Positions 4,793 through 34,513 of a DNA stretch of 64,000 nt are shown here, piece by piece (within the stretch, counting starts at the first letter, position 1; the number at the start of each line of letters is the position of its first letter). Under the pieces are notes generated by a model, which worked only from the letters and a program-made list of their open reading frames with translations, searched no databases and was not told where the DNA came from. The stretch is from Macrostomum lignano. Taxonomy: Eukaryota. The stretch covers positions 1 through 64,000 of the forward strand of contig NIVC01000365.1 in assembly GCA_002269645.1 (NCBI GenBank), in the 5' to 3' direction. Position numbers and translations under genes: made by a program.

Positions 4793-6669
4793 TCACGCTG
4801 TGCCAGTCAGTTTGCTGATCACTTCGGATTTTTTTGAGGACTGCTGCTGCTGCTGCTGGTGCTGGAGCAGCTCCTGGTGCTGAATGAAGATGTCCTTGAA
4901 GGCGTAGTCAGCATCGGGCACGGGCACCCTGTTGAGGTACTGGTCCAACAGGTCGTACCTCTTGTAGGCCTTTGAGAATTCGATTGCTTTGGCAACGTCT
5001 TTGTCGCTCAGGTAGCTGTACAGGTGCTCCAGGTCTATGCCCTGGTAGCCGTGCAGGTGCCACTTGCACATCCAGGGTGGAGGGTTCAGCCGCACCTGGA
5101 GGGCAGAATTCCGGATGCTTGCATGTAACTTAGGTAGTATTAGACCTACACGTATGTTGACAAGACTTGTTTGTGTCACCCAGGATTCGAGCTAAGGACT
5201 TAGATCGACCGCCCGGCAGATTAGAACTCTCAAACTCAGGACTGATGGTGAGCACTGGGATTCGAACTCGGGACTGATGGTGAGCACTAGGATTCGAACT
5301 CGGGACTGATGGTGAGCACTAGGATTCGAATTCGGGACTGATGATAATCTCTGGAATTCAAATTCAGGACTGATGCACTGGGATTCGAACTCGGTACTGA
5401 TGGTGATTCGAATCCCACTCACCCGCTCCCTATTGACGGGCACCGGGTCGTTGCGCGAATACGGTTCCGGCACCATGTCGAAGGGGATCGTGCAGTGACT
5501 ATGCGGCGCGTCCATCAGGTACAGCAGGTTGTCGTCAAGGCGACGCTCGAGCTTCAGCAGCTGGATGGACACGATGCTGGGGCTGTAGAGCTCGTATTCG
5601 ATCTGCACGCACACCTGGTCGACCATATTGCGCAGGGTGAATGTGGTGAAGAGGCCGGTGTGCCTGCGCAGGATGCACAGGCCAACAAAACGGTTCACCT
5701 GGCGGAGGGTTGGAACGAGCAATGAGATTCGCTACTCAGTGTAGTGAGTAGTATATTGCATGTTAGATGTCAGATCTTAGCATGTGCAATGGGAGCCCAG
5801 CAGATAGAGAATGACCGTTGAAAAGGCCATTCCTTGTGATTTAAAGGGCGATTCTTTGAGATTTAGGGGCAATTCTTTGAGATTGAAGGGGCGATTCTTT
5901 GAGATTGAAAGGGCGATTCTTTGAGATTGAAGGGGCGATTCTTTGAGATTGAAAGGGCGATTCTTTGAGATTGAAGGGGCGATTCTTTGAGATTGAAAGG
6001 GCGATTCTTTGAGATTGAAGGGGCGATTCTTTGAGATTGAAAGGGCGATTCCTTGGGATTGAAGGGGCGATTCCTTGGGATTGAAGGGGCGATTCTTTGG
6101 AATTGAAGGGGCGATTAAGGAGTTAAGTCAGCAGATTGATCGAAGCGAAAGGAAGGCCCGCCAACCTTGTTAGGCGCGTGCTTGTCCATCACGCTGACGG
6201 CAAGAATGGAGCCGACGTGGAACTCCGGAATGTTGATGACCCGCCGTCGCCGCATCATCTCGGCCCGGTGCAGCGACTCCACAATGGGGTCGCGGTAGTC
6301 CTGGCTCACTATGGGTGGCAGCGCCTCCTGGTACAGCCGCTTGATCTCCGGCGGCACCTCGGCCTGCTGGTCGGCTGCCTTGGCCCGGCTGTGGTCCGGC
6401 CCGATGCCCGACAGGCGCCAGAACTCCTTCATGGCCTCCGGCGACAGGCGCGGCTTGTACACCCGCGCAATTCCGGCCGGAGCCAGCGGCGGCCCTGGCG
6501 GCACGGCTGGAGATGCGGCTGCTGATGCAGCGGCGATGGAGGCTGGACAGGCGAAGCGGCGAACCGGTGGGCGGCGGTCACTCGGCAGCCGAAGAGGAAC
6601 CTGGAGCCCAGGGACAGGGCGCAGCTGCCAGCTGCTGCTGATGGCGCTGGTGGCATCTCTAGCTGGATG
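4793..6669 (-). CDS. MRPL19: Mitochondrial ribosomal protein L19, 3 coding exons; start codon uncertain
   Basis: Exons ~6669-6166, 5698-5423, 5095-4793, phase 0, GT-AG. Motifs RRRVINIPEFHVGSILAV, FVGLCI.R...GL..TFTLRN, EYELYSPSI..I.LLKLERRLDDNLLYL.DAP, PPPW. No in-frame ATG ahead of the transit-peptide-like segment. Confidence 0.9.
5239..5410. repeat. 32-bp minisatellite, ~5 copies, MRPL19 intron 2
   Basis: GGACTGATGGTGAGCACTAGGATTCGAACTCG recurs at 5239, 5271, 5303. Confidence 0.85.
5841..6116. repeat. 22-bp minisatellite, ~12 copies, MRPL19 intron 1
   Basis: GGGCGATTCTTTGAGATTGAA(A/G) in tandem. Confidence 0.9.
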
Positions 6670-6696
6670 CTGGCAGCATGAACAGGAGTTTGGCCC

Positions 6697-7177
6697 TGTG
6701 ATCTGTGCTGTGACTGGCACTGTGATCTGTGCATGCTGTGACTGGCACTGTGATCTGTGCATGCTGTGACTGGCACTGTGATCTGTGCATGCTGTGACTG
6801 GCACTGTGATCTGTGCTGTGACTGGCACTGTGATCTGTGCTGTGACTGGCACTGTGATCTGTGCTGTGACTGGCACTGATCTGTGCTGTGACTGGAACTG
6901 TGATCTGTGCTGTGACTGGCACTGTGATCTGTGCTGTGACTGGCACTGATCTGTGCTGTGACTGGAACTGTGATCTGTGCTGTGACTGGCACTGTGATCT
7001 GTGCTGTGACTGGCACTGATCTGTGCTGTGACTGGCACTGTGATCTGTGCTGTGACTGGCACTGATCTGTGCTGTGACTGGCACTGATCTGTGCTGTGAC
7101 TGGCACTGTGATCTGTGCATGCTGTGACTGGCACTGTGATCTGTGCATGCTGTGACTGGCACTGTGATCTGTGCATG
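6697..7177. repeat. 22/24/28-bp minisatellite between CAPN7 and MRPL19
   Basis: GTGATCTGTGC(ATGC)TGTGACTGGCACT units; explains the repetitive ORFs on the track. Confidence 0.95.
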
Positions 7178-8212
7178 CCTAGGTTATTATACTCTAAATT
7201 TGAAGAACATTGATCATGAAAGTATTTAGTAAGTCACAGAATAATATTTAGGTTAAAGAACATATTTTAAACACATTTATTTACAATTCAAACTTAAATA
7301 TTAATTTGTTATCTGCACACACACACAGAATAACAAATCAAAGAAGGCTCTTAAGCAAGATAAAATAAGCAGAGTTAACTCAAACACAATCTAATAGCAA
7401 TCAGCTGCAAATGTACTTTAAATGATACTTTTAGTAAGTAAATTTCAGATCTGAATAAAGTACAGTGGCAATCAATAGCAAATTGGGTACCTGGAAACTA
7501 TTTATATTTATAAGTCGAGCACCAGAGGCAAAAATAAAATTCAATTCACAAGTCGCGCACAATGCGCAGCTCCAGCATAACTCTCTGTTTGCGAGTTAAT
7601 ATAAGCCCGGAAGAAAGCATCACAGAACTCATAGGTTGGTTGATGCTAATGACTTATTATTACAATACTTCGAAGTTAACAAGGCAAATTACTGAGTTGC
7701 CAAAAGTGTCCTCATAGTGTCCTATATGATCCTCAAACCAATAAAAATTTTAAATAAACTTAAAAACAGGAGGTTAAGTACATAGTCAACAGCAGTAACA
7801 CTTTTATTCTAAGTAATTCAAACGGGCCTCACTATTGATATGTTGCAAAATTAACTTTGAAAAACTACTGCAAAGCCTTTATTTGAAGATCAAAGCTCAG
7901 GGTCTTAAATTTATGTCAGATCAACTTGTCACTTTGTTTACGGTATATAAGAGTCAACCTAATTTTCTAAACTACCGATATGTAGCGCAATCAACTTTAA
8001 ACTAAGCAATTTGTTAAGTGCTGTGATGAACCCCAAATTTGCAGGTGGGAAAATTTGTTATTATATGTTTTTAAGTAGATTGAATTTAGAAACAATTTTA
8101 GTATATAGAATTCTGAAACTACCGATATGTAGCGTAACCAACTTATCAGCCAAGAAGAAATATGAATTTTCTGAGAAACATGAAATTTTTACTCAGGTGA
8201 CGGTCCGGCCCG

Positions 8213-13322
<5,110 letters not shown>

Positions 13323-13424
13323 GCTCTATAACAGTGCGGCCGCGGGCCCGCTGCGACAGGCAGGAGGGGTCCGCGTGTGCACTTTTACACTGCTGAGCAT
13401 TCTCTAGCTTTCAGGTTGTCTCTG

Positions 13425-13985
13425 AGCACACTTCTCAGCTTAATCTCCTCTCCTCTCAGCCTAATCTCCTCTTCTCTCAGCCAAAGTTTCTCTCCTATCA
13501 GCCTAATCTCCTCTCCTCTCAGCCTAATCTCCTCTTCTCTCAGCCCAATCTCCTTTTCTCTCAGCCTAATCTCCTCTTCTCTCAGCCAAAGTTTCTCTCC
13601 TATCAGCCTAATCTCCTCTCCTCTCAGCCTAATCTCCTCTTCTCTCAGCCCAATCTCCTCTCCTCTCAGCCCAAGCTTCTCTCCTCTCAGCCTAACCCTC
13701 ACTCCTCTCAGCCTAATCTCCTCTCCTCTCAGCCTAATCTCCTCTCCTCTCAGCCTAAGCTTCTCTCCTCTCAGCCTAATCTCATTTCCTCTCAGCCTAA
13801 TCTCTCCTCTCAGCCTAATCTCCTCTCCTCTCAGCCTAAGCTTCTCTCCTCTCAGCCTATATCCTCTCAGCCTAACCTTCACTTCTCTCAGCCTAATCTC
13901 CTTTCCTCTCAGCCTAATCTCTCCTCTCAGTTTAATCTCCTCCTATTAGCCTAATCTCCTCCTATTAGCCTAATCTCCTCTATAA
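13425..13985. repeat. ~21-bp pyrimidine-rich minisatellite between TRAPPC5 and CAPN7
   Basis: CTCTCAGCCTAATCTCCTCTC and variants. Confidence 0.9.
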
Positions 13986-14310
13986 TCATCCTAAACGTAC
14001 CTTATCTCTGAGGCCTCTCTACTTCACCGCCTCTCAGCAGTCTGCTTATCAGAATTCTTTTAACAATTATACTGAATCCTTTTTTAACTCTACTACTTCT
14101 TGTAAGTAGCAAAGAAGCGAAAACCAACACAAACTCGCTTAGAGTATTTCGGCTCACAAGTACAGAATTTATTGCCATAATTGTACACGTATTTCATATC
14201 ACAAACAAGCAGAGACGCTCAACAATGCCAATGGAATACTGCATACAATATAATATTGAGACAGGGTCGCAATTTTAGTTTTAACAATCATGGGTTTATT
14301 GACTAATCAA

Positions 14311-14871
14311 TCAACGAGAGTCCAGCGACCGGTCCCTGGTGAGCACTGAGGGCTCAAACTTCACCTCATAATAGGTGACATCGTTGGAGAAGAACGTGGC
14401 CACCTGGCACTGGAAGCCGGCGGAGCACAGGGCCCCCTCCAGCACGCCGCCGATGAAAGCGGCGCAGTTCACGTTGGTGTCGGCCTTCTGGCTGAAGGAC
14501 ACGAACCTGTTGGTGACGGGCTCCCGCTCAACAAAGTAGAAGGTTCGCTCGTCGTCGGTGCTCTGCTCAAGGTCGTCGCAGTCCTTGCCGAACAGCATCC
14601 GCCACAGGCTGGATTTCACCAGGAACAGCGCGTTCTTCAGCCGGAGCTCGCGGCGGCCATTGCGCTCGCGGAAGAACAGCAGGTCCAGCGACCGGCTGCC
14701 GATGTGGCGGCCGAAGTCCGCCAGCTTGGACTGCAGCTCCTGCACTGTGCGAGAGCGGCCGTTCGAGTACTTGATCATCTCGGACAGCAGCAGGCTGAAG
14801 GTGGCCAGCGGCAGGTCCGTCTTGGGGCGGAGCAGCGACCGGTCTAGCGGAGATCGGGATAGCTGCGACAT
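14311..14871 (-). CDS. TRAPPC5: TRAPP complex subunit 5, single coding exon, 186 aa
   Basis: LATFSLLLSEMIKYS, LWRMLFGK.CDDLE, EREPVTNRFVS, NCAAFIGGVLEGAL...GF.C.V are Bet3-fold TRAPPC5/Trs31 motifs. Confidence 0.95.
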   Translation of the reverse strand: MSQLSRSPLDRSLLRPKTDLPLATFSLLLSEMIKYSNGRSRTVQELQSKLADFGRHIGSRSLDLLFFRERNGRRELRLKNALFLVKSSLWRMLFGKDCDDLEQSTDDERTFYFVEREPVTNRFVSFSQKADTNVNCAAFIGGVLEGALCSAGFQCQVATFFSNDVTYYEVKFEPSVLTRDRSLDSR

Positions 14872-14883
14872 GCTTAGCGGGGC

Positions 14884-17800
14884 ATCGGTAGATTGCGGAG
14901 TGAATCGGTAGATTGCGGAGTGAATCGGTAGATGTTGGAGTGAATCGGTAGATGTTGGAGTGAATCGGTAGATGTTGGAGTGAATCGGTAGATTGCGGAG
15001 TGAATCGGTAGATTGTGGAGTGAATCGGTAGATGTTGGAGTGAATCGGTAGATGTTGGAGTGAATCGGTAGATGTTGGGGTGAATCGGTAGATTGCGGAG
15101 TGAATCGGTAGATGTTGGAGTGAATCGGTAGATGTTGGAGTGAATCGGTAGATTGTGGAGGGAATCGGTAGATTGTGGAGTGAATCGGTAGATTGTGGAG
15201 GGAATCGGTAGATTGTGGAGTGAATCGGTAGATTTTGGAGTGAATCGGTAGATTGTGGAGTGAATCGGTAGATTTTGGAGTGAATCGGTAGATTGTGGAG
15301 TGAATCGGTAGATGTTGGAGTGAATCGGTAGATGTTGGAGTGAATCGGTAGATTGCGGAGTAAATCGGTAGATTGCGAAGTGAATCGGTAGATTGTTGAG
15401 TTAATCAGTAGATTGCGGGAGTGAATCGGTAGATTGTTGAGTGAATCAGTAGATTGCGGAGTGAATCGGTAGATTGCGAAGTGAATCGGTAGATTGCGGA
15501 GTGAATCGGTAGATGTTGGAGTGAATCGGTAGATGTTGGAGTGAATCGGTAGATGTTGGAGTGAATCGGTAGATTGCGGAGTGAATCGGTAGATTGCGAA
15601 GTGAATCGGTAGATTGTTGAGTGAATCAGTAGATTGCGGGAGTGAATCGGTAGATTGCGGAGTGAACGGTAGATTGCGGAGTGAATCGGTAGATTGCGGA
15701 GTGAATCGGTAGATTGTTGAGTGAATCGGTAGATGTTGGAGTGAATCGGTAGATTGCGGAGTGAATCGGTAGATTGTAGAGTGAATCGGTAGATGTTGGA
15801 GTGAATCGGTAGATGTTGGAGTGAATCGGTAGATGTTGGAGTGAATCGGTAGATGTTGGAGTGAATCGGTAGATTGCGGAGTGAATCGGTAGATGTTGGA
15901 GTGAATCGGTAGATTGTGGAGTGAATCGGTAGATTGTGGAGTGAATCGGTAGATTGTGGAGTGAATCGGTAGATGTTGGAGTGAATCGGTAGATTGGAGT
16001 GAATCGGTAGATTGTGGAGTGAATCGGTAGATGTTGGAGTGAATCGGTAGATGTTGGAGTGAATCGGTAGATGTTGGAGTGAATCGGTAGATGTTGGAGT
16101 GAATCGGTAGATGTTGGAGTGAATCGGTAGATTGGAGTGAATCGGTAGATTGTGGAGTGAATCGGTAGATTGTGGAGGGAATCGGTAGATTGTGGAGTGA
16201 ATCGGTAGATGTTGGAGTGAATCGGTAGATTGCGGAGTGAATCGGTAGATTGTGGAGTGAATCGGTAGATGTTGGAGTGAATCGGTAGATTTTGGAGTGA
16301 ATCGGTAGATGTTGGAGTGAATCGGTAGATGTTGGAGTGAATCGGTAGATTGTGGAGGGAATCGGTAGATTGTGGAGTGAATCGGTAGATTGTGGAGTGA
16401 ATCGGTAGATTGTGGAGTGAATCGGTAGATGTTGGAGTGAATCGGTAGATTGCGGAGTGAATCGGTAGATGATGGAGTGAATCGGTAGATGTTGGAGTGA
16501 ATCGGTAGATGTTGGAGTGAATCGGTAGATTGCGGAGTGAATCGGTAGATGTTGGAGTGAATCGGTAGATTGTGGAGGGAATCGGTAGATTGTGGAGTGA
16601 ATCGGTAGATTGTGGAGTGAATCGGTAGATGTTGGAGTGAATTGGTAGATTGCGGAGTGAATCGGTAGATTGTGGAGTGAATCGGTAGATGTTGGAGTGA
16701 ATCGGTAGATGTTGGAGTGAATCGGTAGATGTTGGGGTGAATCGGTAGATTGCGGAGTGAATCGGTAGATGTTGGAGTGAATCGGTAGATGTTGGAGTGA
16801 ATCGGTAGATTGTGGAGGGAATCGGTAGATTGTGGAGTGAATCGGTAGATTGTGGAGGGAATCGGTAGATTGTGGAGTGAATCGGTAGATGTTGGAGTGA
16901 ATCGGTAGATTGCGGAGTGAATCGGTAGATTGTGGAGTGAATCGGTAGATGTTGGAGTGAATCGGTAGATGTTGGAGTGAATCGGTAGATTGCGGAGTAA
17001 ATCAGTAGATTGCAAAGTGAATCGGTAGATTGTTGAGTTAATCAGTAGATTGCGGGAGTGAATCGGTAGATTGTTGAGTGAATCAGTAGATTGCGGAGTG
17101 AATCGGTAGATTGCGAAGTGAATCGGTAGATTGCGGAGTGAATCGGTAGATGTTGGAGTGAATCGGTAGATGTTGGAGTGAATCGGTAGATGTTGGAGTG
17201 AATCGGTAGATTGCGGAGTGAATCGGTAGATTGCGAAGTGAATCGGTAGATTGTTGAGTGAATCAGTAGATTGTTGAGTGAATCGGTAGATTGCGGAGTG
17301 AATCGGTAGATTGCGGAGTGAATCGGTAGATTGTTGAGTGAATCGGTAGATGTTGGAGTGAATCGGTAGATTGCGGAGTGAATCGGTAGATTGTAGAGTG
17401 AATCGGTAGATGTTGGAGTGAATCGGTAGATGTTGGAGTGAATCGGTAGATGTTGGAGTGAATCGGTAGATGTTGGAGTGAATCGGTAGATGTTGGAGTG
17501 AATCGGTAGATTGCGGAGTGAATCGGTAGATGTTGGAGTGAATCGGTAGATTGTGGAGGGAATCGGTAGATTGTGGAGTGAATCGGTAGATTGTGGAGGG
17601 AATCGGTAGATTGTGGAGTGAATCGGTAGATTGTGGAGTGAATCGGTAGATTGTGGAGTGAATCGGTAGATGTTGGAGTGAATCGGTAGATTGCGGAGTG
17701 AATCGGTAGATGTTGGAGTGAATCGGTAGATGTTGGAGTGAATCGGTAGATGTTGGAGTGAATCGGTAGATTGCGGAGTGAATCGGTAGATGTTGGAGTG

Positions 17801-20800
17801 AATCGGTAGATTGTGGAGGGAATCGGTAGATTGTGGAGTGAATCGGTAGATTGTGGAGTGAATCGGTAGATGTTGGAGTGAATTGGTAGATTGCGGAGTG
17901 AATCGGTAGATTGTGGAGTGAATCGGTAGATGTTGGAGTGAATCGGTAGATGTTGGAGTGAATCGGTAGATGTTGGGGTGAATCGGTAGATTGCGGAGTG
18001 AATCGGTAGATGTTGGAGTGAATCGGTAGATGTTGGAGTGAATCGGTAGATTGTGGAGGGAATCGGTAGATTGTGGAGTGAATCGGTAGATTGTGGAGGG
18101 AATCGGTAGATTGTGGAGTGAATCGGTAGATGTTGGAGTGAATCGGTAGATTGCGGAGTGAATCGGTAGATTGTGGAGTGAATCGGTAGATGTTGGAGTG
18201 AATCGGTAGATGTTGGAGTGAATCGGTAGATTGCGGAGTAAATCGGTAGATTGCGAAGTGAATCGGTAGATTGTTGAGTTAATCAGTAGATTGCGGGAGT
18301 GAATCGGTAGATTGTTGAGTGAATCAGTAGATTGCGGAGTGAATCGGTAGATTGCGAAGTGAATCGGTAGATGTTGGAGTGAATCGGTAGATGTTGGAGT
18401 GAATCGGTAGATGTTGGAGTGAATCGGTAGATGTTGGAGTGAATCGGTAGATTGCGGAGTGAATCGGTAGATTGCGGAGTGAATCGGTAGATTGTTGAGT
18501 GAATCGGTAGATGTTGGAGTGAATCGGTAGATTGCGGAGTGAATCGGTAGATTGTAGAGTGAATCGGTAGATGTTGGAGTGAATCGGTAGATGTTGGAGT
18601 GAATCGGTAGATGTTGGAGTGAATCGGTAGATGTTGGAGTGAATCGGTAGATTGCGGAGTGAATCGGTAGATGTTGGAGTGAATCGGTAGATTGTGGAGG
18701 GAATCGGTAGATTGTGGAGTGAATCGGTAGATTGTGGAGGGAATCGGTAGATTGTGGAGTGAATCGGTAGATTGTGGAGTGAATCGGTAGATTGTGGAGT
18801 GAATCGGTAGATGTTGGAGTGAATCGGTAGATTGCGGAGTGAATCGGTAGATGTTGGAGTGAATCGGTAGATGTTGGAGTGAATCGGTAGATGTTGGAGT
18901 GAATCGGTAGATTGCGGAGTGAATCGGTAGATGTTGGAGTGAATCGGTAGATTGTGGAGGGAATCGGTAGATTGTGGAGTGAATCGGTAGATTGTGGAGT
19001 GAATCGGTAGATGTTGGAGTGAATTGGTAGATTGCGGAGTGAATCGGTAGATTGTGGAGTGAATCGGTAGATGTTGGAGTGAATCGGTAGATGTTGGAGT
19101 GAATCGGTAGATGTTGGGGTGAATCGGTAGATTGCGGAGTGAATCGGTAGATGTTGGAGTGAATCGGTAGATGTTGGAGTGAATCGGTAGATTGTGGAGG
19201 GAATCGGTAGATTGTGGAGTGAATCGGTAGATTGTGGAGGGAATCGGTAGATTGTGGAGTGAATCGGTAGATGTTGGAGTGAATCGGTAGATTGCGGAGT
19301 GAATCGGTAGATTGTGGAGTGAATCGGTAGATGTTGGAGTGAATCGGTAGATGTTGGAGTGAATCGGTAGATTGCGGAGTAAATCGGTAGATTGCGAAGT
19401 GAATCGGTAGATTGTTGAGTTAATCAGTAGATTGCGGGAGTGAATCGGTAGATTGTTGAGTGAATCAGTAGATTGCGGAGTGAATCGGTAGATTGCGAAG
19501 TGAATCGGTAGATTGCGGAGTGAATCGGTAGATGTTGGAGTGAATCGGTAGATGTTGGAGTGAATCGGTAGATGTTGGAGTGAATCGGTAGATTGCGGAG
19601 TGAATCGGTAGATTGCGGAGTGAATCGGTAGATTGTTGAGTGAATCGGTAGATGTTGGAGTGAATCGGTAGATTGCGGAGTGAATCGGTAGATTGTAGAG
19701 TGAATCGGTAGATGTTGGAGTGAATCGGTAGATGTTGGAGTGAATCGGTAGATGTTGGAGTGAATCGGTAGATGTTGGAGTGAATCGGTAGATTGCGGAG
19801 TGAATCGGTAGATGTTGGAGTGAATCGGTAGATTGTGGAGGGAATCGGTAGATTGTGGAGTGAATCGGTAGATTGTGGAGTGAATCGGTAGATGTTGGAG
19901 TGAATCGGTAGATTGCGGAGTGAATCGGTAGATTGTGGAGGGAATCGGTAGATGTTGGAGTGAATCGGTAGATGTTGGAGTGAATCGGTAGATGTTGGAG
20001 TGAATCGGTAGATGTTGGGGTGAATCGGTAGATTGCGGAGTGAATCGGTAGATGTTGGAGTGAATCGGTAGATGTTGGAGTGAATCGGTAGATTGTGGAG
20101 GGAATCGGTAGATTGTGGAGTGAATCGGTAGATTGTGGAGGGAATCGGTAGATTGTGGAGTTAATCGGTAGATGTTGGAGTGAATCGGTAGATTGCGGAG
20201 TGAATCGGTAGATTGTGGAGTGAATCGGTAGATGTTGGAGTGAATCGGTAGATTGTTGAGTGAATCGGTAGATTGCGAAGTGAATCGGTAGATTGTTGAG
20301 TTAATCAGTAGATTGCGGGAGTGAATCGGTAGATTGTTGAGTGAATCAGTAGATTGCGGAGTGAATCGGTAGATTGCGAAGTGAATCGGTAGATTGCGAA
20401 GTGAATCGGTAGATTGCGGAGTGAATCGGTAGATGTTGGAGTGAATCGGTAGATGTTGGAGTGAATCGGTAGATGTTGGAGTGAATCGGTAGATTGCGGA
20501 GTGAATCGGTAGATTGCGAAGTGAATCGGTAGATTGTTGAGTGAATCAGTAGATTGTTGAGTGAATCGGTAGATTGCGGAGTGAATCGGTAGATTGCGGA
20601 GTGAATCGGTAGATTGTTGAGTGAATCGGTAGATTGCGGAGTGAATCGGTAGATTGTGGAGTGAATCGGTAGATTGTGGAGTGAATCGGTAGATTGCGGA
20701 GTGAATCGGTAGATTGTGGAGTGAATCAGTAGATTGTGAAGTGAATCGGTAGATTGTGGAGTGAATCGGTAGATTGGGGAGTGAATCGGTAGATTGTGGA

Positions 20801-21019
20801 GTGAATCGGTAGATTGTGGAGTGAATCGGTAGATTGTGGAGTGAATCGGTAGATTGTGGAGTGAATCGGTAGATTGTAGAGTGAATCGGTAGATTGTGGA
20901 GTGAATCGGTAGATTGGGGAGTGAATCGGTAGATTGGGGAGTGAATCGGTAGATTGCGGAGTGAATCGGTAGATTGCGGAGTGAATCGGTAGATTGTTTA
21001 GTGAATCGGTAGATTGTGG
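14884..21019. repeat. 6.1-kb array of a 20-bp unit (~305 copies) with higher-order structure
   Basis: GTGAATCGGTAGAT(TGC/GTT/TGT)GGA; ends 13 bp upstream of the TRAPPC5 ATG. Confidence 0.98.
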
Positions 21020-21584
21020 AAAACATCGGATGATTAAATCCTAAACACATAAACAAATGATTTTTATTTTTAGTACGAGTAAAGAAATGAAAATCAAGGA
21101 CAGCGAGATACTTCAATAGCCTTGTGGACACCAGTTTAATTAGCTGTGCTCAGAGACAACAGACAGAGCAACACCAGCAACGAAGCGCAGCAGAATTTGC
21201 AGTTGTTAAACAGAGAACAAGTAATATGAGTAGAACAAGTAGTATAACAAAAAAATGGAAATTGCAATATTCAAGAGTGAAATTTCGATAAAAAATTAAC
21301 GAACACGCGACATGAACGCAAATGTGGAAAACTTTAACTACTTTAGCGTTAGATATGATCTGTACATGCTAACAAATTTTCTCAATACTCAACATCAAAA
21401 TCGTACACATTTTGATTGCGAGCGAAATTTTATATAATAGTTGGAGAAACGACAAGCGACAACACAGTTAAATTAAATAATATAAACAATGCCTAGAGCA
21501 ACTTTGAAATGCTACTTTAAGTAAGCTGGAAGCTTTTTACTAGCTTTCACTGGTATGCAAATCTCATGGTGATATGAGTACCTG

Positions 21585-21960
21585 TGTGATTTGAGGACTC
21601 CTCAGTGTGATTTAAGGACCTCTTTGTGTGATTTAAGAACCACTCCCAGTATGATTTGAGGACCTCTCTCAGTGTGATTTGAGGACCACTCCCAGTGTGA
21701 TTTGAGGACCACTCCCAGTGTGATTTGAGGACCACTCCCAGTGTGATTTGAGGACCTCTCTCAGTGTGATTTGAGGACCTCTCTCAGTGTGATTTGAGGA
21801 CCTCTATCATTGTGGCTTGAGGACCACTCTCAGTATGCTTTGAGGACCACTTTTAGTGTGAATTGAGCACCACTCTGTGATTTGTGCACCTCTGTATGAT
21901 TTAAGGACCTCTCTGTGATTTGAGGACCTTTCTCATATATTGATTTTAGGACCACTCTGT
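21585..21960. repeat. ~23-bp minisatellite downstream of the MED14 stop
   Basis: GTGTGATTTGAGGACC(ACTCCCA/TCTCTCA) units. Confidence 0.85.
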
Positions 21961-22080
21961 GAATGTCAAAATGATTTAAATAGGATTTGGGATGTGTAAG
22001 AGTAAGATTCCTAAAGCAGTGCAAGGGCAAACACATAGAAAACTCGGCAGCAAACTATACTTGGCAATGTACAAACTGCA

Positions 22081-25000
22081 TCACTGGATCCAGCGCCCAG
22101 ACGCGATGGCCCGGAACAGATGCGGCAGCGAGCACTCGCGGCCCTCGCCGCTGCAGGCAGTCTGCACCGGCTTGATCGCCTCCGCGTCCAGCCGCATCAG
22201 CGCAGCCGCAATCAGGCCGCCGCCGCCGCTAGCAGCGAACGGATTAAACAATTTGGCGTCGTTCTTCAATTCGTCGTAGAGAATCATGATTGACAGGCAG
22301 CGGCGGGACTCCGAGTCCGTTAGCAACAGGCTGAAGTACAGCTCGGGCCGCTGGTCGTGCAGCAGGTAGATGCCAACTGCGGGCATGCCCAGCCGGTAGA
22401 ACTGCGTGCTCGGGTAGTCCTTGACTGTCAGCAGCTGCAGCTGGGTGAGCAGCGGCTTGTTAGGCGGCGGCAGCAGCCGAGGATCCTCCAGGCAGAGACA
22501 GGCCCTGAGAGCTCCCGGGCTGCACAGCAGGGCCTGCAGGGAGGCCACAGCCTGCCAGCGGTAGGGCGGGTGGAACAGCAGGCGCTGGACGAAGGTGGCC
22601 AGGGCGGGCTCCCCGGCGTCCACGTGGCAGAGGACGCCTTCGAGGCAGAGGCGGACATTCAGACAGCCCAGCCGTTCGGTGCGCAGAGTCAGAAGGCAGC
22701 CATCGTCCAGGAGTTCGTGCCGCTGCTGCTGCTGGCGCTCGCAGGACTGCGAATTAGCAAAATTATCATTATTATTTTTTAACATTATGCCTCATTAATA
22801 CATTTATGAGCCTCATTATGTTAGATGAGGATCTCTGAAGGAGCTTCTAAACAAAAGGATGTGGCTCACAAGGAGAGAATGCAGCTTTTAACAGGCTTTA
22901 TGGGGCTCCCATGGGAGTAGGATGGGGCTCTCAACGAGAGTTTGATGAGGCTCTCGAAAGGAGTAGGATGGGGTTATCAACGAGATTGCTGAGACTCTTG
23001 AAGGGAGTAGGATGGGGCTCTCAACAAGAGTTTAATGAGGCTCTTAACGGGAGTAGGATAGGGCTCTCAACGGGAGTAGGATAGGGCTCTCAACGGGAGT
23101 AGGATAGGGCTCTCAACGGGAGTAGGATAGGGCTCTCAACGAGAGTTTGATGATGAGACTCTAAAGGGAGTAGGTTGGGCTCTCGACGAAAGTTGGATGT
23201 GGCTCCTAACGAGATGTGTGTCTTAAAGGATGCGGATCTTAGTGAAAGGATGGGGCTTCAACGAGAGGCTGAGGCTCGAGTCAATAGGATGGGGCTCCCA
23301 AAGAGCTTCCTTAGCTCGTATCAATATTGCTCCGAGGGCCCCGCACAATTGTATCCTGGAGTTCTCACCTGACACAGAGCCAAGAATTGGCAAGCGCAGG
23401 CCAGCCAATGGTACGGCCTGAGATCGGCCCAATCAGCGGCCGGCAGGGCCACGGACTGGTCGCTGTCAATCCGGGCGGCCGGGTGCAGGCGGATGAGCTG
23501 CAGCGGGGTCAGCTGAGGCGACGCCAGACGGACGCAGTTGTCAGCGTCCAGACGGACAGAGAGGGTGACTCTGCCGCGGTGCTCAAGCTGCAGTCGGTAG
23601 GGATGTGCCAGTAGGACAGTCTGGCGGCAGCAGGTGAGCTGCGGGCTGATGTGCCAGCCGCCAGCCAGGCAGGCCAGAGGCGCCAGGGCCCGATAGGAGG
23701 AGGCGAGCTGGCGCAGCAGGTGCAGCACGCTGTGATGCCTGAGAAAGTCCTTGGACAGCTGCTCTCGGACTGGAAAATGCGGATTAGGGGCGGACGGCCG
23801 GCGGCTGACGAAGTTAATGTAGATGTCCGGCTTCTGGCCGGCGGCGGCCTTCTGGATCATGTGCATCTCCCACACTGGGACGCCTTCCTCGTCGCGAACG
23901 GGGCCGTAGGCGATCCGCAGGCCGGGGAAGCCGAAGGAGACCAGGCAGGTGTCCGGCGGCCAGTTGGAGCGCCGGGTCAGCGGCAGGCACATCTGGGTGG
24001 CGTCGGGACAGGAGGGCACGGCTTTAACAATGAGACAGAAGGAGTCAAAGCAGAGGGCATATTCAGGGGAAGATGCAGGGAGGGTGGATATGCAGGGTTG
24101 GATATGCAGGGAGGGTGAAGATGCAGAGAGGGTGGAAATGCAGGGGGTGGAGATGCAGGGGGTGGAGATGCAGGGAAGGTGGAGATGCAAGGAGGGTGGA
24201 GATGCAGAGAGGGTGGAGATGCAGAGAGGGTGGAGATGCAGAGAGGGTGGAGATGCAGAGAGGGTGGAGATGCTGAGAGGGTGGAGATGCAGAGAGGGTG
24301 GAAATGCAGGGAGGGTGGAGATGCTGAGAGGGTGGAGATGCAGGGAGGGTGGAGATGCAGGGAGGGTGGAGATGCAGGGAGGGTGGAGATGCAGAGAGGG
24401 TGGAGATGCAGAGAGGGTGGAGATGCAGGGAAGGTGGAGATGCAGGGAGGGTGGAGATGCAGAGAGGGTGGAGATGCAGGGAGGGTGGAGATGCAGGGAG
24501 GGTGGAGATGCAGGGAGGGTGGAGATGCAGGGAGGGTGGAGATGCAGGGAGGGTGGAGATGCTGAGAGGGTGGAGATGCTGAGAGGGTGGAGATGCTGAG
24601 AGGGTGGAGATGCTGAGAGGGTGGAGATGTAGGGAGGGTGGAGATTTAAGGAGAGTAGAAAGATTAAAGACACGAATATCCTCACCTGCACCAGGTGGCA
24701 AAGCTGTTGCCACTCAGACTGCACGCTGCCGACGGCCTCGGCGCAGCGGCTGGACGGGCCCAGCTCGTTGACGCCCAGGTGGACGCAGGGCGGGCAGGTC
24801 CGGACGCGGCGCTCCGGCGGGTCAAGCGGGCAGCCGCTGAGGCGCCACTCGCGCACCAGAGCCACCAGGGAGGCGCGGGGCGGCGGCACGCGGAAGTTGA
24901 CAGGCGGCTGGTACTGGCCAGACCGGTACAGCCGCAGTGTCAGCGACTGCACCAGGGAGCTGGCGTGGGCGGCGGCCTCCGCGCTGATGCCCGGCGGCGT

Positions 25001-28000
25001 AGGCAGACTGCGGGCGGAGTTTCGCGGCAATTTTACTAGTAGATAGACATTGAAGGGAGGTTCCTAATTTCCTCTCTGGCTTCCCTAATTCCCTCTCTGG
25101 CTTCCCTAATTCCCTCTCTGGCTTCCCTAATTTCCTCTCTGGCTACCCTAATTCCCTCTCTGGCTTCCCTAATTTCCTCTCTGGCTACCGTAATTCCCTC
25201 TCTGGCTTCCTTAGTTACCTCTGGCTTCCTTAGTTACCTCTGGCTTCCTTAGTTACCTCTGGCTTCCTTAACTCCCTCTCTGGCTTCCCTAATTTCCTCC
25301 CTGGCTACCCTAATTGCCTCTCTGGCTTCCCTAATTCCCTCTCTGGCTTCCTTAGTTACCTCTGGCTTCCTTAGTTACCTCTGGCTTCCTTAACTCCCTC
25401 TCTGGCTTCCCTAATTTCCTCTCTGGCTTCCCTAATTTCCTCTCTGGCTACCCTAATTCCCTCACTAGCTTCCCTAATTCCCTCTCTGGCTTCCCTAATT
25501 CCCTCTCTGGCTTCCCTAATTCCCCTCAGCCTTCCCTAATTCCCTCCCTGGCTTCCCTAATTCCCTCCCTGGCTTCCCTAATTTCCTCTCTGGCTACCCT
25601 AATTCCCTCTCTGGCTTCCCTAATTCCCTCTGGCTTCCTTAATTCCCTCTGGCTTCCTTAATTCTCTCTCTGGCTTCTCTAATTCCTTCTCCGGCTTCCT
25701 TAACCGTTCTGCATATTTAACACTCTCTCAGGCTCTCGAAACCCGTCTCAGGCCTTGATAACAATATTATGATGATCCAACAGCAGGCGCCCCACCTGTG
25801 CAACGTGAGCGCGCTCATCCCAGCCGAGTCCGGCGCGAACTCCCTGTGAGGCAGGCCGGATCTGGCCAGCTCGCACATCACTTGGTGCAGCAGGTGGTCC
25901 TCTTCGATCAAATCCACATAGTCCGTAAGCCAGGCGGCCCGCAGCAGGCTGAACTGGTCCGGCCGCGGCGCGCTGAGCAGCTTTGTCCGTCGGCGGCGGG
26001 CCAGGACGGCCAGCGGATCCGAGGCGGACGGATCTGTCCGGCTAGGCAGCGACAAGTCTGGCGGCCGCATCGGACAGATCTTGGCCGGCCGGATATAGTA
26101 GCCAGCGTGGGCGGAGCCGGTCACGTAGAAGCAGGCAAAGCTGGGATTGAGGCCGCCAGTGGGCACCAGGGCCAGGTAGTTGTTCTGGTAGCGGTGCAGC
26201 TGCACAAAGCAGGCGTGCTGTGCCGGCCCGATTACGCTGGCCAGGGCGGACGGCAGCGGCTTGGCGGTCGGTAGGCTGGAGGCGACCCGGCGATCGGGGA
26301 ACAGGGCGCGGACGCGGCGGCAGAGAAGCCAAGCACGGAGGCCGGCCAAAGCCAGGGCGACACGGCGAAGAGACGGCTGATCTTCGTTGAGGCGGTCCTC
26401 CAGCTCGGCCACGTGCGGACATGGCCGGCCACCGGACGCGGGCAGCCGGACAGAGTAGAGGCCGCGATAGGCGTTGACGCCGATTGACAGGCGCTCGTGA
26501 GTGGCGGCCGGCTGCAGCAGGCTGAGGGTGAGCGACTCGGCCGATCTCGCGGGCGGCTCGGCCACCAGCAGGGCCAGCAGTTTGTAGGCGCGGTACAGCA
26601 GGTCGCGGCACCGGCACTGGATGGTCCGGTCTAGGAGGCGCTCCAGCGACAGCTCGTCCGACCGGATGCAGCGGCCGATGGAGGTGGCGTCGCTGTATTG
26701 GTTGTGGGTGGGGAGAGCATTGGCTTCAGCAGTGAGTGACTGCCTGTCTTTTGATTGTCACACTGACAGGTCAGAATTGTCACACTGACAGGTCAGAATT
26801 GTCACACTGACAGGTCAGAATTGTCTGACAGGTCAGTGTTGACACACTGACAGGTCAGAATTGTCACACTGACAGGTCAGAATTGTCACACTGACAGGTC
26901 AGAATTGTCACACTGACAGGTTAGTGTTGACACACTGACAGGTCAGAATTGTCACACTGACAGGTCAGAATGGTCACACTGACAGGTCAGAATTGTCACA
27001 CTGACAGGTCAGAATGGTCACACTGACAGGTCAGAATTGTCACACTGACAGGTCAGAATTGTCACACTGACAGGTCAGAATGGTCACACTGACAGGTCAG
27101 AATTGTCACACTGACAGGTCAGTGTTGACACACTGTAGTCAGTTGTGAAGATGGGTGTCCAGACAGCCCATTCTCACCTGTCCGGCAGGTCGGGGAAGTG
27201 GGTGACGCAGATGGGCCGCCTGGCATCAAGGGGATCGGTGTGCAGGCGGAGGCCGTGCCCGCGCACCCGGTAGCCGGCGGTCGCGGGCCGGCGCAGGTCG
27301 CGCCAGTAGACCAACTGCAGCGAACTGCCGGCCGTATACTTTTCAACCGCTAGCAGGTCGCCGAATCGCAGGCGAATCAATCGGCAGGCCTGCTCGTACA
27401 GCAGGTCGAGCTGCAGGAACGTGCAGAACGAATGCAGCATGTCGTACAGGTGCACAAGAGGCGGCCTGGGGTCGAAGTCCTTGCTGATGATGCGGTCCTG
27501 GCAGCGCTGATGAAGCCACTGCATCTGCAGAGGATGCACCAGCGGCTTGCCTCGGCCAGTGTGCAGGTCGCGCAGCAGGCACTTGATGTTGAGAATGCGC
27601 CACGGGTTGCTAAGCGAGTCGGACATCAGCGTCAGCGAGACGGAGAACTCGTGCGGCACAGTCAGCACTGCCCGGCCGTTGTACACCTGCGGGACAGGTG
27701 AAAATGACATGTTAAACTAAAAAAGTTTACTTGAACCATTCGAAGGTCATTGGAAGGTCACTGCAGTACCTTAATCTGCCGCATAGCCGTGGGAATCTCG
27801 GTAATAGTTAACCGATACAAGATGAGGCAATCCAGCTGCTCCAGGCACTCGCGCTGCTCCCAGGGTTTGATTGGCGCCGGCGGGATGCCAGCCAGGCGTT
27901 TAACGCAGGCCGGCAGCCTGGTGTAGGTGTGCTGGGTGAACACGTCCACGGCCATGATGGTGGCGAAGGGCGGCAGGCGGGCGCTGGTCAGGGCGCCCTT

Positions 28001-28447
28001 GGCCAGCTCCATGAGCCAGTTGGCAGTGCCGAACATCAGGCCGCTCTGCTCCTCCAAGTAGGCGATGATCTGGTCGCACTGGTCCACCCTGCCGGCCCCG
28101 CTGGCCCACTTCACCAGGGCCAACAGGCGGATGAGGGTGTAGCGCACCCGGCTCAGGTACTTCACCAATTCAATCTTTCTCTCCATGTCATTCTTGCTGT
28201 GCAGCAGTTCGCTCAACAGGTTCAGATCGGTGTAGGCTTTCTGGCAGGTGAACTCGATGACCCGGGCCAGCGGTATCATGTCCTGCCGGACTGGAGGCTG
28301 CAGCATCATCATCTGCTGCTGCTGCTGTTGTTGTTGTTGCTGCTGCTGCTGCTGAAGCTGCAACTGCTGCTGGGGCGACATAGACATTGTCATAGCATGT
28401 GGACCCGGCGGCGGGCCCTGGTGCATTTGCGGATGATGCGGATACAT
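22081..28447 (-). CDS. MED14: Mediator subunit 14, 6 exons, ~1230 aa
   Basis: Exons 28447-27770, 27686-27178, 26692-25796, 25007-24686, 23992-23369, 22746-22081 with consistent phases (0,2,2,0,0). N-terminal Med14 domain (KAYTDLNLLSELL...RKIELVKY...R..LIRLLALVKWA; LPPFATIMAVDV...TYTRLP), LHSFC..LQLDLL, C-terminal ILYD...ECSL resembling the MED14 C-terminus; polyQ at N-terminus. Exon 5 acceptor is the least certain. Confidence 0.9.
22890..23180. repeat. 23-bp degenerate minisatellite, MED14 intron 5
   Basis: CGGGAGTAGGATAGGGCTCTCAA near-exact at 23048-23130, decaying on both sides. Confidence 0.8.
24065..24645. repeat. 17-bp minisatellite, MED14 intron 4
   Basis: GAGGGTGGAGATGCAG(G/A) units. 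Confidence 0.9.
25060..25700. repeat. 21-bp minisatellite, MED14 intron 3
   Basis: CCCTAATTCCCTCTCTGGCTT units. Confidence 0.9.
26755..27132. repeat. 22-bp minisatellite, MED14 intron 2
   Basis: GTCACACTGACAGGTCAGAATT units. Confidence 0.95.
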
Positions 28448-30319
28448 GTTGGCCCGCTGCAGAAATTAGTGCACAAATTGGTCAATCAGACTGAAAGCAA
28501 CTAGCAGTAAAATAGATGCACCGATTATGTACAATAATTTATGGAAGCAATACATTGTGATTTTTGTAACACCTATATTTTTCTAAGCCAGATGCCACTA
28601 AAAAAAGAGCCAAATATTCTGTAATCCATATTTATCAATAATTTTACAATTATAGCGCTTCTTGGGTTTTTCAAGACTTCAAAGTCTTATTCAATTGTCA
28701 AATTCAAGCAATGTATGAACACAGAGCCTGCATAGAAGCAACGCAAAGTCAGCCATTAATGAGCGCATTGCATGGCCCCTCCCCTCATATAAAGATAAAA
28801 GTATTTGCTTGTTATTGATTTTACTCTATCAAGTCTTCACTCAGGTCTATGAAGTGTTTATATGCCCTCTAGACCTGTGTTCACCTCTTTGCTGTTGTCA
28901 AGTGGCTATCTGCTTGCAGCCTCATCATCTGCTACTCCCCTTTGTTGTAGGGCTAGATAAGTATTAGTAAAACTCCTAGCCCACCCACTTCTACTCTGGA
29001 ATGTTTCCATACCCAAGGGTTGCTATTCTTAGCCCTCCCTCATATTAATAAAAAGCCTTATTAAATTAAATGATTTATCTAGTCATTCTAATATGATAAC
29101 TCTGTGTATATAACCATAATTTGTTTTTTTAGAAAATAGAAATTAGCTAGACTTTAGGTTTTTGAACATTGTCATCAACAGAGCTCTGCTGACTATGCTA
29201 TTTTTATAGTCTAAAAATAATAGAATAAAAAATCTAACCATAGACAAAAATATTGGATACAGAAGCTAAGGCTAGAAGGGGCCAGCAAGGGTTATTAAGA
29301 AAGTGTCTAGTGTAAACTATCAGATAAAGCATGTTGACAAAAGGAACAAAATGATAAGTAAAATTGTGCACACCAACAACTTATAGAAAGTGCCCAAGTG
29401 GCCAGAGTATTGTAGTGCTAGGGGCATACCTACTTGTGCAAATAGAGTTAAGTCAAGAGCCACCTAAGCTAGAAGCTGAGTCAGAGATTAAGGAAGAGAA
29501 GTTTTTCTAATGTTACAGTTGTGCTTTATTCTTAACATGAGATAGTGTGGCTGGTAGCACCAGTTGTGTCAATAGCTTAAGTAACACTAGCCATCTCCAT
29601 ATAGGCTACATAAGTGTCAGGGTGTGCCCTTAGCATATTATAGAAATCCTATGCTATATTGTTGATTTGTATACAAGGGGTTTGCAAGGTAGATATGATG
29701 CCCAGATGCATTTCTTATACCAACTTGCATTTATATCATGCTTCATATAACTGTACATTCATATATTTAATATATAATAGCAGCAGGTTCTTTGCTAGCT
29801 TAGCTTAAAAGTTTGAGAGAGCACCATACACTGTTTTTTGTGAGCTTCTTAGATGTGGCTGCTTGTGTCATTGACCTTCTTTGTATTATCTGTGTCCACA
29901 CTACTATGTATGGTAAAAAGCCAAAGGTCACAATTCTTAATAAACAATAAAAATATATATGTACTTTTTGCCTATTTTGATCATTTTTGATCATTTGTTT
30001 GATAAGCATTTGAGTGCATTGTGTTGGCTATGTGGTGTTTTGAGTTGTGTGAGCCAAACTATAGACAATAAAACCCTATTTATATTTCTTTTATAATTTT
30101 TAAAAACTATATCTACAATCTATTTAGTAATTTATATTTACTTGCTTGCAAGCTAAATAAACTTTATTTTACTATGTTTTAAAAGCACTCATTTTGTCTG
30201 CCAATAGGCAAACTGACCATGCATTGCATAGATGAACAAATGACAAAAGGTGTCCAACTGTCTGTTGCAAATTTGGGAATTTACTAGTTTCACATTGTGG
30301 CTAGAGTCAAGGCTAGGTT

Positions 30320-34000: not shown

Positions 34001-34320
34001 AGCTGTACATATCTACTTTTGGCATGCAAGGCCAATACACGCCCAAATTTTTGGGCATATACTACAAGATCTAGAGTATAGGCCTAGCCTAGTTGTCAGT
34101 TGTCACTATCTGTTCTATTATATTAGGCCTAGTATTACCATAAAAATTTAAATATTGAACAAATTATTTCTTAATTTTAGGCAATCCTTTGCCTTTGGTT
34201 TCTTGCTCTAAATTATTTAAATCTCTTTTTTGGACTTTTTTGCTATTGCCAGCCAGTATGGCTAGCCAACCTCCAATGCCACAACCACAATCTATTGTCC
34301 CTGTAGCTGAAGTCCCCAAC

Positions 34321-34513
34321 AACCTAGCGGCTCACACAAATACTATAGAGGGAATGTGGGGCTACTGCAAAGCCACGTTCCAAGCTTTGCATGGAACCAG
34401 CAACAAGTTATTCAAAACATACCTCGTACCTGCAGGAGTTCATGTGGCGACAAGCTTTTTCCCATAACACTTCAGCAATATCCTCTACTGGATAAGACAC
34501 TACTACCGTGTAG
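34321..34513 (+). pseudogene. Merlin/ISXO2-like (IS1595-type) transposase C-terminal fragment
   Basis: HTNTIEGMWGYCK...HGTS..LFKTYL[7-bp duplication]QEFMWR fits the ISXO2 motif HTNxIEGxW...YLxEFxWR. Confidence 0.7.

What the first reader, a model, noticed from the sequence alone, without database searches (positions are those of the whole stretch)
4793..28460. Candidate SL trans-spliced operon: MED14 > TRAPPC5 > CAPN7 > MRPL19
Seen: four functionally unrelated housekeeping genes on one strand, each with a 3' splice acceptor just before the coding start: CTAATTTCTGCAG|CGGGCCAAC-ATG (MED14, 9 nt), CCGCTAAG|C-ATG (TRAPPC5, 1 nt, weak), TGTTATAG|AGC-ATG (CAPN7, 3 nt), CTGCCAG|CAT (MRPL19). The three downstream genes have GC-rich first exons, unlike the AT-rich first exons beside the RPN1/STAR promoter, and no promoter-like stretch is evident between them. 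Established: SL trans-splicing and polycistronic transcription occur in flatworms, nematodes and tunicates. Inference: one ~30-kb primary transcript starting near 34.6-35.4 kb.
Basis: partly seen in the sequence, partly recalled or inferred. Interest (0 to 1): 0.75.

Follow-up and report, generated by a model that had tools for sequence, protein, structure and literature searches.

The report
Probable flatworm operon, known kind
Four housekeeping genes lie head to tail in the flatworm Macrostomum lignano and fit the published layout of that species' spliced-leader operons, but only RNA data, which I could not reach, can prove it, and such operons are already catalogued genome-wide there.

Summary
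The window is the first 64 kb of contig NIVC01000365.1 of the Macrostomum lignano Mlig_3_7 assembly. [quoted passage not shown] The quoted strings and the four genes (MED14, TRAPPC5, CAPN7, MRPL19, minus strand) are real. The acceptor observation alone is not above chance, because 48% of all ATGs on that strand have an AG within 9 nt upstream. Only the MED14 site matches the published SL-acceptor motif. Each spacer is mostly a minisatellite (6137, 549 and 484 nt). The MRPL19 start was misread because this copy has a 1-nt frameshift; the gene's own ATG is at 6656. After subtracting repeats, stop-to-acceptor distances are about 700, 435 and 1010 nt or less. They fall to roughly 35–700 nt when measured from AATAAA signals. 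That meets the published M. lignano operon criterion if the downstream genes are SL-spliced. The MED14–TRAPPC5 spacer has no AG, one GT and no consensus donor, so TRAPPC5 has almost no room for a promoter of its own outside MED14's transcript. A transcription start at 34.6–35.4 kb is unsupported. Verdict: a plausible, unproven, ordinary member of a known class.

The parts
22081..28447 (-). MED14 coding span. ATG at 28447-28445, stop at 22083-22081. Multi-exon, with minisatellites in its introns at 22900-23205, 24071-24645, 25063-25703 and 26754-27135.
28457..28469 (-). Candidate SL acceptor of MED14, CTAATTTCTGCAG|, with the exon starting at 28456, 9 nt before the ATG. It matches the published motif [T/C]TNCAG. 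The SL's terminal ATG would be in frame. A second motif match, TTTCAG|, ends at 28491.
21021..22080 (-). AT-rich (GC 0.38) sequence after the MED14 stop, 3'UTR-like, with a small array at 21584-21958. ATTAAA lies at 21140 and AATAAA at 21068-21063, about 45 nt before the big array.
14884..21020 (-). Minisatellite of 6137 nt with a 20-nt unit (sense strand CTCCRCAATCTACCGATTCA), about 307 copies. On the sense strand it has 0 AG, 1 GT and no GT[GA]AG. It ends 13 nt before the TRAPPC5 ATG. In the paralogous copy L002 it is only 1373 nt.
14311..14871 (-). TRAPPC5, a single coding exon of 186 aa.
14863..14880 (-). TRAPPC5 candidate acceptors. The alternative TGTCGCAG| ends at 14863, inside codons 2-3, and the SL ATG would be in frame. 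A 3-codon uORF, ATGCCCCGCTAA, lies at 14882-14871.
13323..14310 (-). TRAPPC5-CAPN7 spacer. It has AATAAA at 14300 and 14173, AT-rich unique DNA at 13982-14310, a 21-nt-unit minisatellite at 13433-13981, and 110 nt of GC-rich unique DNA. Candidate acceptors are TGTCGCAG| ending at 13351 and TGTTATAG| ending at 13326.
8213..13322 (-). CAPN7 (PalB-type calpain, MIT + Peptidase_C2). About 6 coding exons; four of the five introns carry a minisatellite.
6671..8212 (-). CAPN7-MRPL19 spacer. It has 1038 nt of AT-rich unique DNA (GC 0.32) with AATAAA at 7883, 7808 and 7281, then a 24-nt-unit minisatellite at 6691-7174, then the acceptor-like CTGCCAG| ending at 6670.
4793..6656 (-). MRPL19. Its own ATG is at 6656-6654 and the stop at 4795-4793. 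At the G-run 6462-6464 the window copy is one G shorter than copy L003, which breaks the frame between the ATG and the L19 domain.
28470..37995 (.). A 9.5-kb AT-rich region (GC 0.33-0.48) between MED14 and the next minus-strand gene upstream, a Cys-loop receptor ending at 37996. It has no long minisatellite (only one 32-nt repeat at 37636-37667). It holds a decayed mariner at about 30.35-31.14 kb and a diverged local duplication. The promoter of MED14, or of the operon, must lie here, but its position is unknown.

Best explanation
MED14, TRAPPC5, CAPN7 and MRPL19 of Macrostomum lignano form a spliced-leader operon of the type already described for this species. One promoter, somewhere in the AT-rich DNA upstream of 28.47 kb, drives a long precursor. 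Each upstream cistron is cleaved and polyadenylated at an AATAAA in its AT-rich 3'UTR. Each downstream cistron receives the 35-nt SL (which ends in ATG) at a CAG or AG a few to about 30 nt from its start codon. The intercistronic regions were originally short and have been inflated by minisatellite arrays that are discarded with the spacer RNA.

Shown here: species identity, gene identities and order, spacer anatomy, repeat-adjusted distances, and the absence of donors and acceptors in the large array.

Inferred: that the downstream genes are actually SL-spliced, that transcription is continuous, which AG is used, and where the promoter lies.
For: (1) The window is identical to M. lignano contig NIVC01000365.1.
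(2) In this species 30% of genes are SL-spliced and 15% are placed in operons. 45% of human-conserved genes are SL-spliced. Operon spacers peak at about 100 nt once repeats are subtracted, and the published cut-off is 1 kb.
(3) Stop-to-acceptor distances minus tandem repeats are 696, 435 and 1008 nt. Measured from AATAAA signals they are about 35, 270-400 and 100-700 nt.
(4) The TRAPPC5 ATG lies 13 nt after a 6.1-kb array. The array has no AG, one GT and no GT[GA]AG donor on the sense strand, and it begins about 45 nt after MED14's AATAAA. Any TRAPPC5 transcript must therefore start inside MED14's 3'UTR or inside the array, and the first AG after the array sits directly at the start codon.
(5) The MED14 acceptor CTGCAG| fits the published SL-acceptor motif.
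(6) All four starts have a CAG|C within 30 nt. Two exact words (GCAGCGGGCC and TGTCGCAGC) occur in the whole window only at these starts (empirical p about 0.02-0.03, post hoc).
(7) The same four-gene order is kept in two other copies in the assembly.
Against: I could obtain no RNA evidence of any kind. Exact-protein look-ups found only genome contigs, and the supplements of three M. lignano papers do not list these genes.

A nearby AG is expected by chance. Three of the four acceptors do not match the published motif, although only 44% of real sites do.

The spacers after CAPN7 and TRAPPC5 keep 330-1040 nt of AT-rich unique DNA that could hold internal promoters, and TATA-like words are present at chance level.

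60% of SL-spliced genes in this species are not in operons.

The other two copies are about 99% identical, so conserved order among them carries no evolutionary weight.

The third spacer passes the 1-kb rule only if a 3'UTR is allowed for.
Confidence: 0.5

Rival explanations
1. The genes are separate transcription units that merely sit close together. Each gene, or some of them, has its own promoter in the AT-rich unique part of the preceding spacer. The pre-mRNA carries the minisatellite as an outron and is SL trans-spliced as a monocistronic gene. A mixed version is also possible, for example MED14+TRAPPC5 as one unit and CAPN7 and/or MRPL19 with internal promoters, like C. elegans 'hybrid operons'.
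For: 60% of SL-spliced M. lignano genes are outside operons. There are 329 nt (TRAPPC5-CAPN7) and 1038 nt (CAPN7-MRPL19) of AT-rich unique DNA between the stop codon and the array, similar in composition to the RPN1/STAR promoter region (GC 0.32-0.36 versus 0.33) and with TATA-like words at 7512 and 7506. Published reporter work found that 2 kb or less upstream is sufficient as a promoter in this species.
Against: For TRAPPC5 there is essentially no unique DNA outside MED14's 3'UTR. The repeat-adjusted distances fall in the short, operon mode of the published bimodal distribution. TATA-like words are not enriched.
Confidence: 0.33
2. The genes are conventional and use no SL. The AGs near the start codons are cis acceptors joined to unannotated 5'-UTR exons, with the minisatellites lying in 5'-UTR introns. 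Alternatively they are not splice sites at all, and transcription starts just upstream of each ATG.
For: Minisatellites lie in most of the ordinary introns of these genes, so an array next to a start codon could be a 5'-UTR intron. AG near ATG is expected by chance. GT[GA]AG words exist at 14157 and 7832 in two of the spacers.
Against: There is no consensus donor anywhere in the 7.2 kb before TRAPPC5. A start immediately upstream of the TRAPPC5 or MRPL19 ATG would lie inside a minisatellite. Conserved housekeeping genes are the class most often SL-spliced in this species.
Confidence: 0.12
3. One reading: one ~30-kb primary transcript that starts at 34.6-35.4 kb.
For: None beyond the fact that the promoter must lie somewhere in 28.47-38.0 kb.
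Against: I found nothing distinctive at 34.6-35.4 kb. The interval is AT-rich and has no tandem repeats. A decayed mariner and a local duplication lie between it and MED14. From general knowledge, outrons in other SL organisms are usually hundreds of nt long, not 6-7 kb.
Confidence: 0.05

Closest known systems
Macrostomum lignano SL operons as defined by Ustyantsev & Berezikov 2021 (PMC8629364) and the multi-acceptor 'transcriptional units' of Wudarski et al. 2017 (PMC5730564)
   Same: Same species and assembly. Co-oriented conserved housekeeping genes. Spacers are short once repeats are removed and are inflated by simple repeats. The published size range is two to nine genes. The acceptor is CAG-type.
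   Different: Nothing in kind differs. SL-read support for these particular genes could not be checked here. The 6.1-kb array is a large spacer insertion, but I did not compare it with the published distribution.
Caenorhabditis elegans SL2-type operons
   Same: Unrelated housekeeping genes are transcribed from one promoter. An intercistronic region of about 100 nt lies between the poly(A) signal and the trans-splice acceptor. Operons hold 2-8 genes (general knowledge).
   Different: M. lignano has a single SL rather than a specialised SL2. The SL ends in ATG. The spacers here carry kilobase minisatellites. No U-rich (Ur) element was examined.
Operons of parasitic flatworms (Schistosoma, cestodes; PMC12582326)
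   Same: Flatworm SLs ending in AUG. Mostly 2-gene operons, up to nine genes. Candidate operons are defined by same-strand spacing (300 bp or less) plus an SL acceptor on the downstream gene.
   Different: The raw spacers here (1-7 kb) would fail the 300-bp rule and pass only after repeat subtraction.
Ciona / Oikopleura operons
   Same: SL-resolved polycistrons of housekeeping genes.
   Different: From general knowledge, those operons have no or minimal intercistronic sequence. Here clear 3'UTR-like DNA and spacers exist.

Membership tests
M. lignano SL operon (published operational definition) | Adjacent genes in the same orientation, not interrupted by an opposite-strand gene | tested here: met
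   The four genes are consecutive on the minus strand. I recognised no plus-strand gene in the spacers, only short ORFs that I did not search.
M. lignano SL operon (published operational definition) | Intergenic distance under 1 kb after subtracting repeats | tested here: met
   Stop-to-acceptor distances minus TRF arrays are 696, 435 and 1008 nt. All are under 1 kb once any 3'UTR is allowed (AATAAA-based estimates of about 35, 270-400 and 100-700 nt). The poly(A) sites themselves are inferred, not observed.
M. lignano SL operon (published operational definition) | Downstream gene carries the SL (SL-containing reads at its 5' end) | not testable with these tools
   No M. lignano transcript data were reachable. 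No SL copy is present in the window, as expected.
M. lignano SL operon (published operational definition) | Acceptor motif [T/C]TNCAG at the exon-outron junction (found at 44% of real sites) | tested here: inconclusive
   The motif is met at MED14 (CTGCAG|). It is not met at the other three starts, which have TCGCAG|, TAAG|, TATAG| and GCCAG|.
Eukaryotic operon in the strict sense | One promoter and a polycistronic precursor spanning all cistrons | not testable with these tools
   This needs long-read or RT-PCR data and 5'-end or chromatin data. Indirect support exists only for MED14-TRAPPC5.
Eukaryotic operon in the strict sense | Gene order conserved in related species | tested here: inconclusive
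   The order is kept in two other copies in the same assembly, but they are about 99% identical. No related flatworm locus was retrievable.

The most novel reading that the evidence does not exclude
RNA polymerase II reads straight through the 6.1-kb minisatellite, which has no AG and almost no GT, between the MED14 poly(A) site and the TRAPPC5 acceptor. Cleavage and polyadenylation of one cistron and SL addition to the next would then be separated by kilobases of repeat RNA rather than about 100 nt. This would suggest that the two events need not be physically coupled in flatworm operons. It might also mean that spacer arrays survive only if they carry no splice signals. The shared CAG|C-containing words at the four starts could be part of a trans-splice acceptor signal richer than the published hexamer.
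Probability: 0.3. Interest if true: 0.35.

Novelty: new member of a known kind. Interest (0 to 1): 0.15.

Why it matters
If confirmed, this is one more four-gene operon among the thousands already predicted in M. lignano, so its value is mainly practical. It shows that raw spacing misleads in this repeat-rich genome. It warns that promoter fragments for TRAPPC5, CAPN7 or MRPL19 reporters may not exist next to those genes. It also flags a frameshift in the assembly that corrupts the MRPL19 model. The only point of wider interest is how polycistron resolution copes with a 6-kb repeat-filled spacer.

Tried and rejected
(1) Direct RNA evidence. Exact look-ups of the TRAPPC5 protein, both with its own Met and with an SL-donated Met, found no transcript-derived contigs. 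The protein cluster holds only genome-derived members.

(2) Published per-gene annotation. The supplements of Wudarski 2017, Grudniewska 2018 and Grudniewska 2016 held as text do not contain MED14, TRAPPC5, CAPN7 or MRPL19. No paper links these genes to Macrostomum.

(3) Footprinting with the two paralogous copies. They are about 99% identical and differ mainly by 1-nt indels and array length, so they carry no information.

(4) Synteny in other species. CAPN7 homologues with long contigs turned out to be metagenome eukaryote contigs without TRAPP or L19 neighbours. [quoted passage not shown]

(5) The idea that MRPL19 lacks its own ATG and depends on the SL's ATG. I rejected it. Copy L003 has an intact ATG-to-L19 frame, and codon statistics favour that frame.

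(6) The idea that AG-free arrays are a general feature of the spacers. I rejected it, because the other two spacer arrays are AG-rich on the sense strand.

(7) An SL or SL RNA gene in the window, or any Rfam family. None was found.

(8) TATA-word scan of the spacers. Frequencies were at chance level and uninformative.

(9) Repeats shared between spacers or with the rest of the window. None were found, so I could identify no transposable-element content to subtract.
Full report
**Origin of the window.** The TRAPPC5 reading frame at 14311-14871 (minus strand) matches a gene call on NCBI assembly GCA_002269645.1, contig NIVC01000365.1, positions 14311-14859. The 20.5 kb fetched from that contig is base-for-base the reverse complement of window 4311-24859. 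The window is therefore the first 64 kb of that contig. NIVC00000000 is the Mlig_3_7 genome of the free-living flatworm Macrostomum lignano (PMC5730564).

**What is already known for this species.**
- M. lignano has a single 35-nt spliced leader, CGGTCTCTTACTGCGAAGACTCAATTTATTGCATG, which ends in ATG (PMC8629364).
- SL-containing reads were mapped genome-wide. About 7% of assembled transcripts are precursors with several trans-splice sites.
- A later analysis estimates that 30% of genes are SL-spliced and 15% lie in operons of two to nine genes.
[quoted passage not shown] The top acceptor motif is [T/C]TNCAG, found at 9551 of 21754 sites.
- Operon spacers are inflated by repeats. After subtracting repeats, the spacing between SL-spliced neighbours is bimodal with a main peak near 100 bp, and 1 kb was chosen as the operon cut-off.

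What remains open is whether this particular cluster belongs to the catalogue.

**Check of the observation.**
- The quoted strings are present exactly where stated.
- The genes are MED14 (first exon aligns to human MED14, E 4e-39), TRAPPC5, a calpain-7 type protease with MIT domains and mitochondrial ribosomal protein L19.
- They are consecutive on the minus strand. Coding spans are 28447-22081, 14871-14311, 13322-8213 and 6656-4793.
- Their first coding exons have GC3 of 0.83-0.90. The first exons of RPN1 (ATG 56183, minus) and of the STAR/QKI-like gene (ATG 56793, plus) have GC3 of 0.43 and 0.37, although their later exons are GC3-rich. That contrast is real but rests on two control genes.

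**The acceptor argument is weak on its own.**
- On this strand 48% of all ATGs have an AG ending within 9 nt upstream, and 25% within 3 nt.
- Only the MED14 site, CTAATTTCTGCAG|CGGGCCAAC-ATG, matches the published motif. The background rate of that motif within 12 nt of an ATG is 4.6%.
- The STAR control gene also carries TTCTTCCAG 15 nt before its ATG.

**The MRPL19 start was misread.**
- The gene has an ATG at 6656-6654, 13 nt after the CAG ending at 6670.
- In the window copy this ATG is out of frame with the L19 domain.
- In copy L003 one additional G in the run at 6462-6464 joins the ATG to the L19 frame without interruption.
- A codon-usage log-likelihood trained on the neighbouring exons favours the ATG frame between about 6640 and 6520.
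- I therefore dropped my own intermediate idea that the SL donates the start codon of MRPL19.

Each of the three spacers has the same layout:
- a stop codon;
- AT-rich unique DNA with one or more AATAAA;
- a minisatellite;
- a short unique stretch;
- the next start codon.

The arrays lie at 14884-21020 (20-nt unit, 6137 nt), 13433-13981 (21-nt unit) and 6691-7174 (24-nt unit).

| Spacer | Stop to acceptor minus arrays | From an assumed cleavage site ~20 nt after the AATAAA |
|---|---|---|
| MED14 to TRAPPC5 | 696 nt | about 35 nt |
| TRAPPC5 to CAPN7 | 435 nt | 270-400 nt |
| CAPN7 to MRPL19 | 1008 nt | 100-700 nt, depending on which signal is used |

These values fall in the operon mode of the published distribution.

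**The MED14-TRAPPC5 junction is the most telling.**
- The array begins about 45 nt after AATAAA at 21068 and ends 13 nt before the TRAPPC5 ATG.
- On the sense strand the array has no AG and a single GT.
- The whole 7.2-kb spacer has no GT[GA]AG donor.
- The first AG after the array is the one at the start codon.
- A TRAPPC5 promoter would therefore have to lie inside MED14's 3'UTR or inside the array. Either way the array must be transcribed and then removed, or else form a 5'UTR made of repeat sequence.
- In the paralogous copy L002 the array is only 1373 nt. Its length is therefore unstable and presumably not functional.

**Which AG is used cannot be decided here.**
The CAG at 14865-14863 (ATG TCG CAG|CTA) would put it in frame.
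- The exact 10-mer GCAGCGGGCC occurs in the whole window only at the MED14 and CAPN7 starts. The exact 9-mer TGTCGCAGC occurs only at the CAPN7 and TRAPPC5 starts.
- Two of six window pairs sharing a 9-mer happens in 2-3% of random draws from the same region. This is a post-hoc hint that CAG|C sites are the real acceptors, and nothing more.

**What could not be tested.**
- No transcript-derived sequence of M. lignano was reachable.
- The text-held supplements of three M. lignano papers do not list these genes.
- The two other copies of the cluster in the assembly (NIVC01000592.1 and NIVC01003988.1) keep the order. They are about 99% identical and differ by 1-nt indels and array length, so they say nothing about selection.
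- CAPN7 homologues on long contigs were metagenome eukaryotes without TRAPP or L19 neighbours.

**The upstream end.**
- Between the MED14 acceptor (28457) and the next minus-strand gene, a Cys-loop receptor ending at 37996, lie 9.5 kb of AT-rich DNA.
- This stretch has no long minisatellite (only a 32-nt repeat at 37636-37667). It contains a decayed mariner (30.35-31.14 kb) and a diverged local duplication.
- Nothing marks 34.6-35.4 kb as a start site.
- TATA-like words occur at chance frequency in all spacers, upstream of MED14 and in the RPN1/STAR intergenic region. Sequence alone can neither find nor exclude promoters.

**Verdict.**
- The best reading is an ordinary M. lignano SL operon with spacers inflated by minisatellites. 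My confidence is about 0.5 for the full four-gene unit.
- Confidence is higher for the MED14-TRAPPC5 pair. It is lower for CAPN7-MRPL19, where about 1 kb of unique AT-rich DNA could hold an internal promoter.
- The main rival is closely spaced but separately promoted genes, possibly themselves SL-spliced (about 0.33).
- Conventional cis-spliced 5'UTRs are less likely (about 0.12).
- The kind of system is already known and catalogued in this species, so interest is low.
- The only mildly unusual element is the 6-kb splice-signal-free array inside a putative intercistronic region.

Noticed in passing
window 6462-6464 (also L002:18258-18880 and L003:10477-11100): The three near-identical copies of the MRPL19 first exon differ by 1-nt indels in short homopolymer runs. 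The window and L002 lack a G that L003 has. L002 has two further single-base insertions that break the L19 frame. These are either assembly errors of the long-read assembly or decay of redundant copies.
   Followed up: partly
window 14884-21020; L002:8625-9997: The same 20-nt-unit array is 6137 nt in the window copy and 1373 nt in the otherwise ~99% identical copy. This causes the extreme GC skew (0.73) at 16-20 kb.
   Followed up: partly
window 5233-27135: Most of the introns I traced in MED14, CAPN7 and MRPL19 carry their own, mutually unrelated minisatellite (units of 4-32 nt). The 9.5 kb upstream of MED14 carries none longer than 32 nt.
   Followed up: no
window 28451-28460, 13345-13358, 14862-14870 (minus strand): The exact words GCAGCGGGCC (MED14, CAPN7) and TGTCGCAGC (CAPN7, TRAPPC5) occur nowhere else in the 64 kb. 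Both contain a CAG|C next to a start codon. The empirical chance is about 0.02-0.03, post hoc.
   Followed up: partly
window 45148-46239 (+) and 30347-31144 (+): An intact 363-aa mariner/Mos1-type transposase ORF (HTH_48, Transposase_1, DDE_3) and a decayed copy in the AT-rich region upstream of MED14.
   Followed up: partly
window 1819-3011 (-), 41906-42473 (-), 47587-48147 (+): Three fibrinogen-related-domain gene copies. Two of them lie in inverted orientation on either side of the intact mariner.
   Followed up: no
window 55938-57074: RPN1 (minus, ATG 56183) and a STAR/QKI-like KH-domain gene (plus, ATG 56793) are head to head, 609 nt apart. Both have AT-rich first coding exons (GC3 0.43 and 0.37) but GC3-rich later exons. 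This is a 5'-to-3' composition gradient that the four cluster genes lack.
   Followed up: partly
window 37996-40632 (-): A Cys-loop ligand-gated ion channel gene (Neur_chan_LBD and Neur_chan_memb) is the next minus-strand gene upstream of MED14.
   Followed up: no
window 32274-32778 and 33289-34077: A diverged local duplication (73-90% identity in three blocks, one of them inverted) inside the AT-rich region.
   Followed up: no
window 14871-14882 (minus strand): A three-codon upstream ORF, ATG CCC CGC TAA, ends directly at the TRAPPC5 ATG. It would be removed if the SL is added at either candidate acceptor.
   Followed up: no
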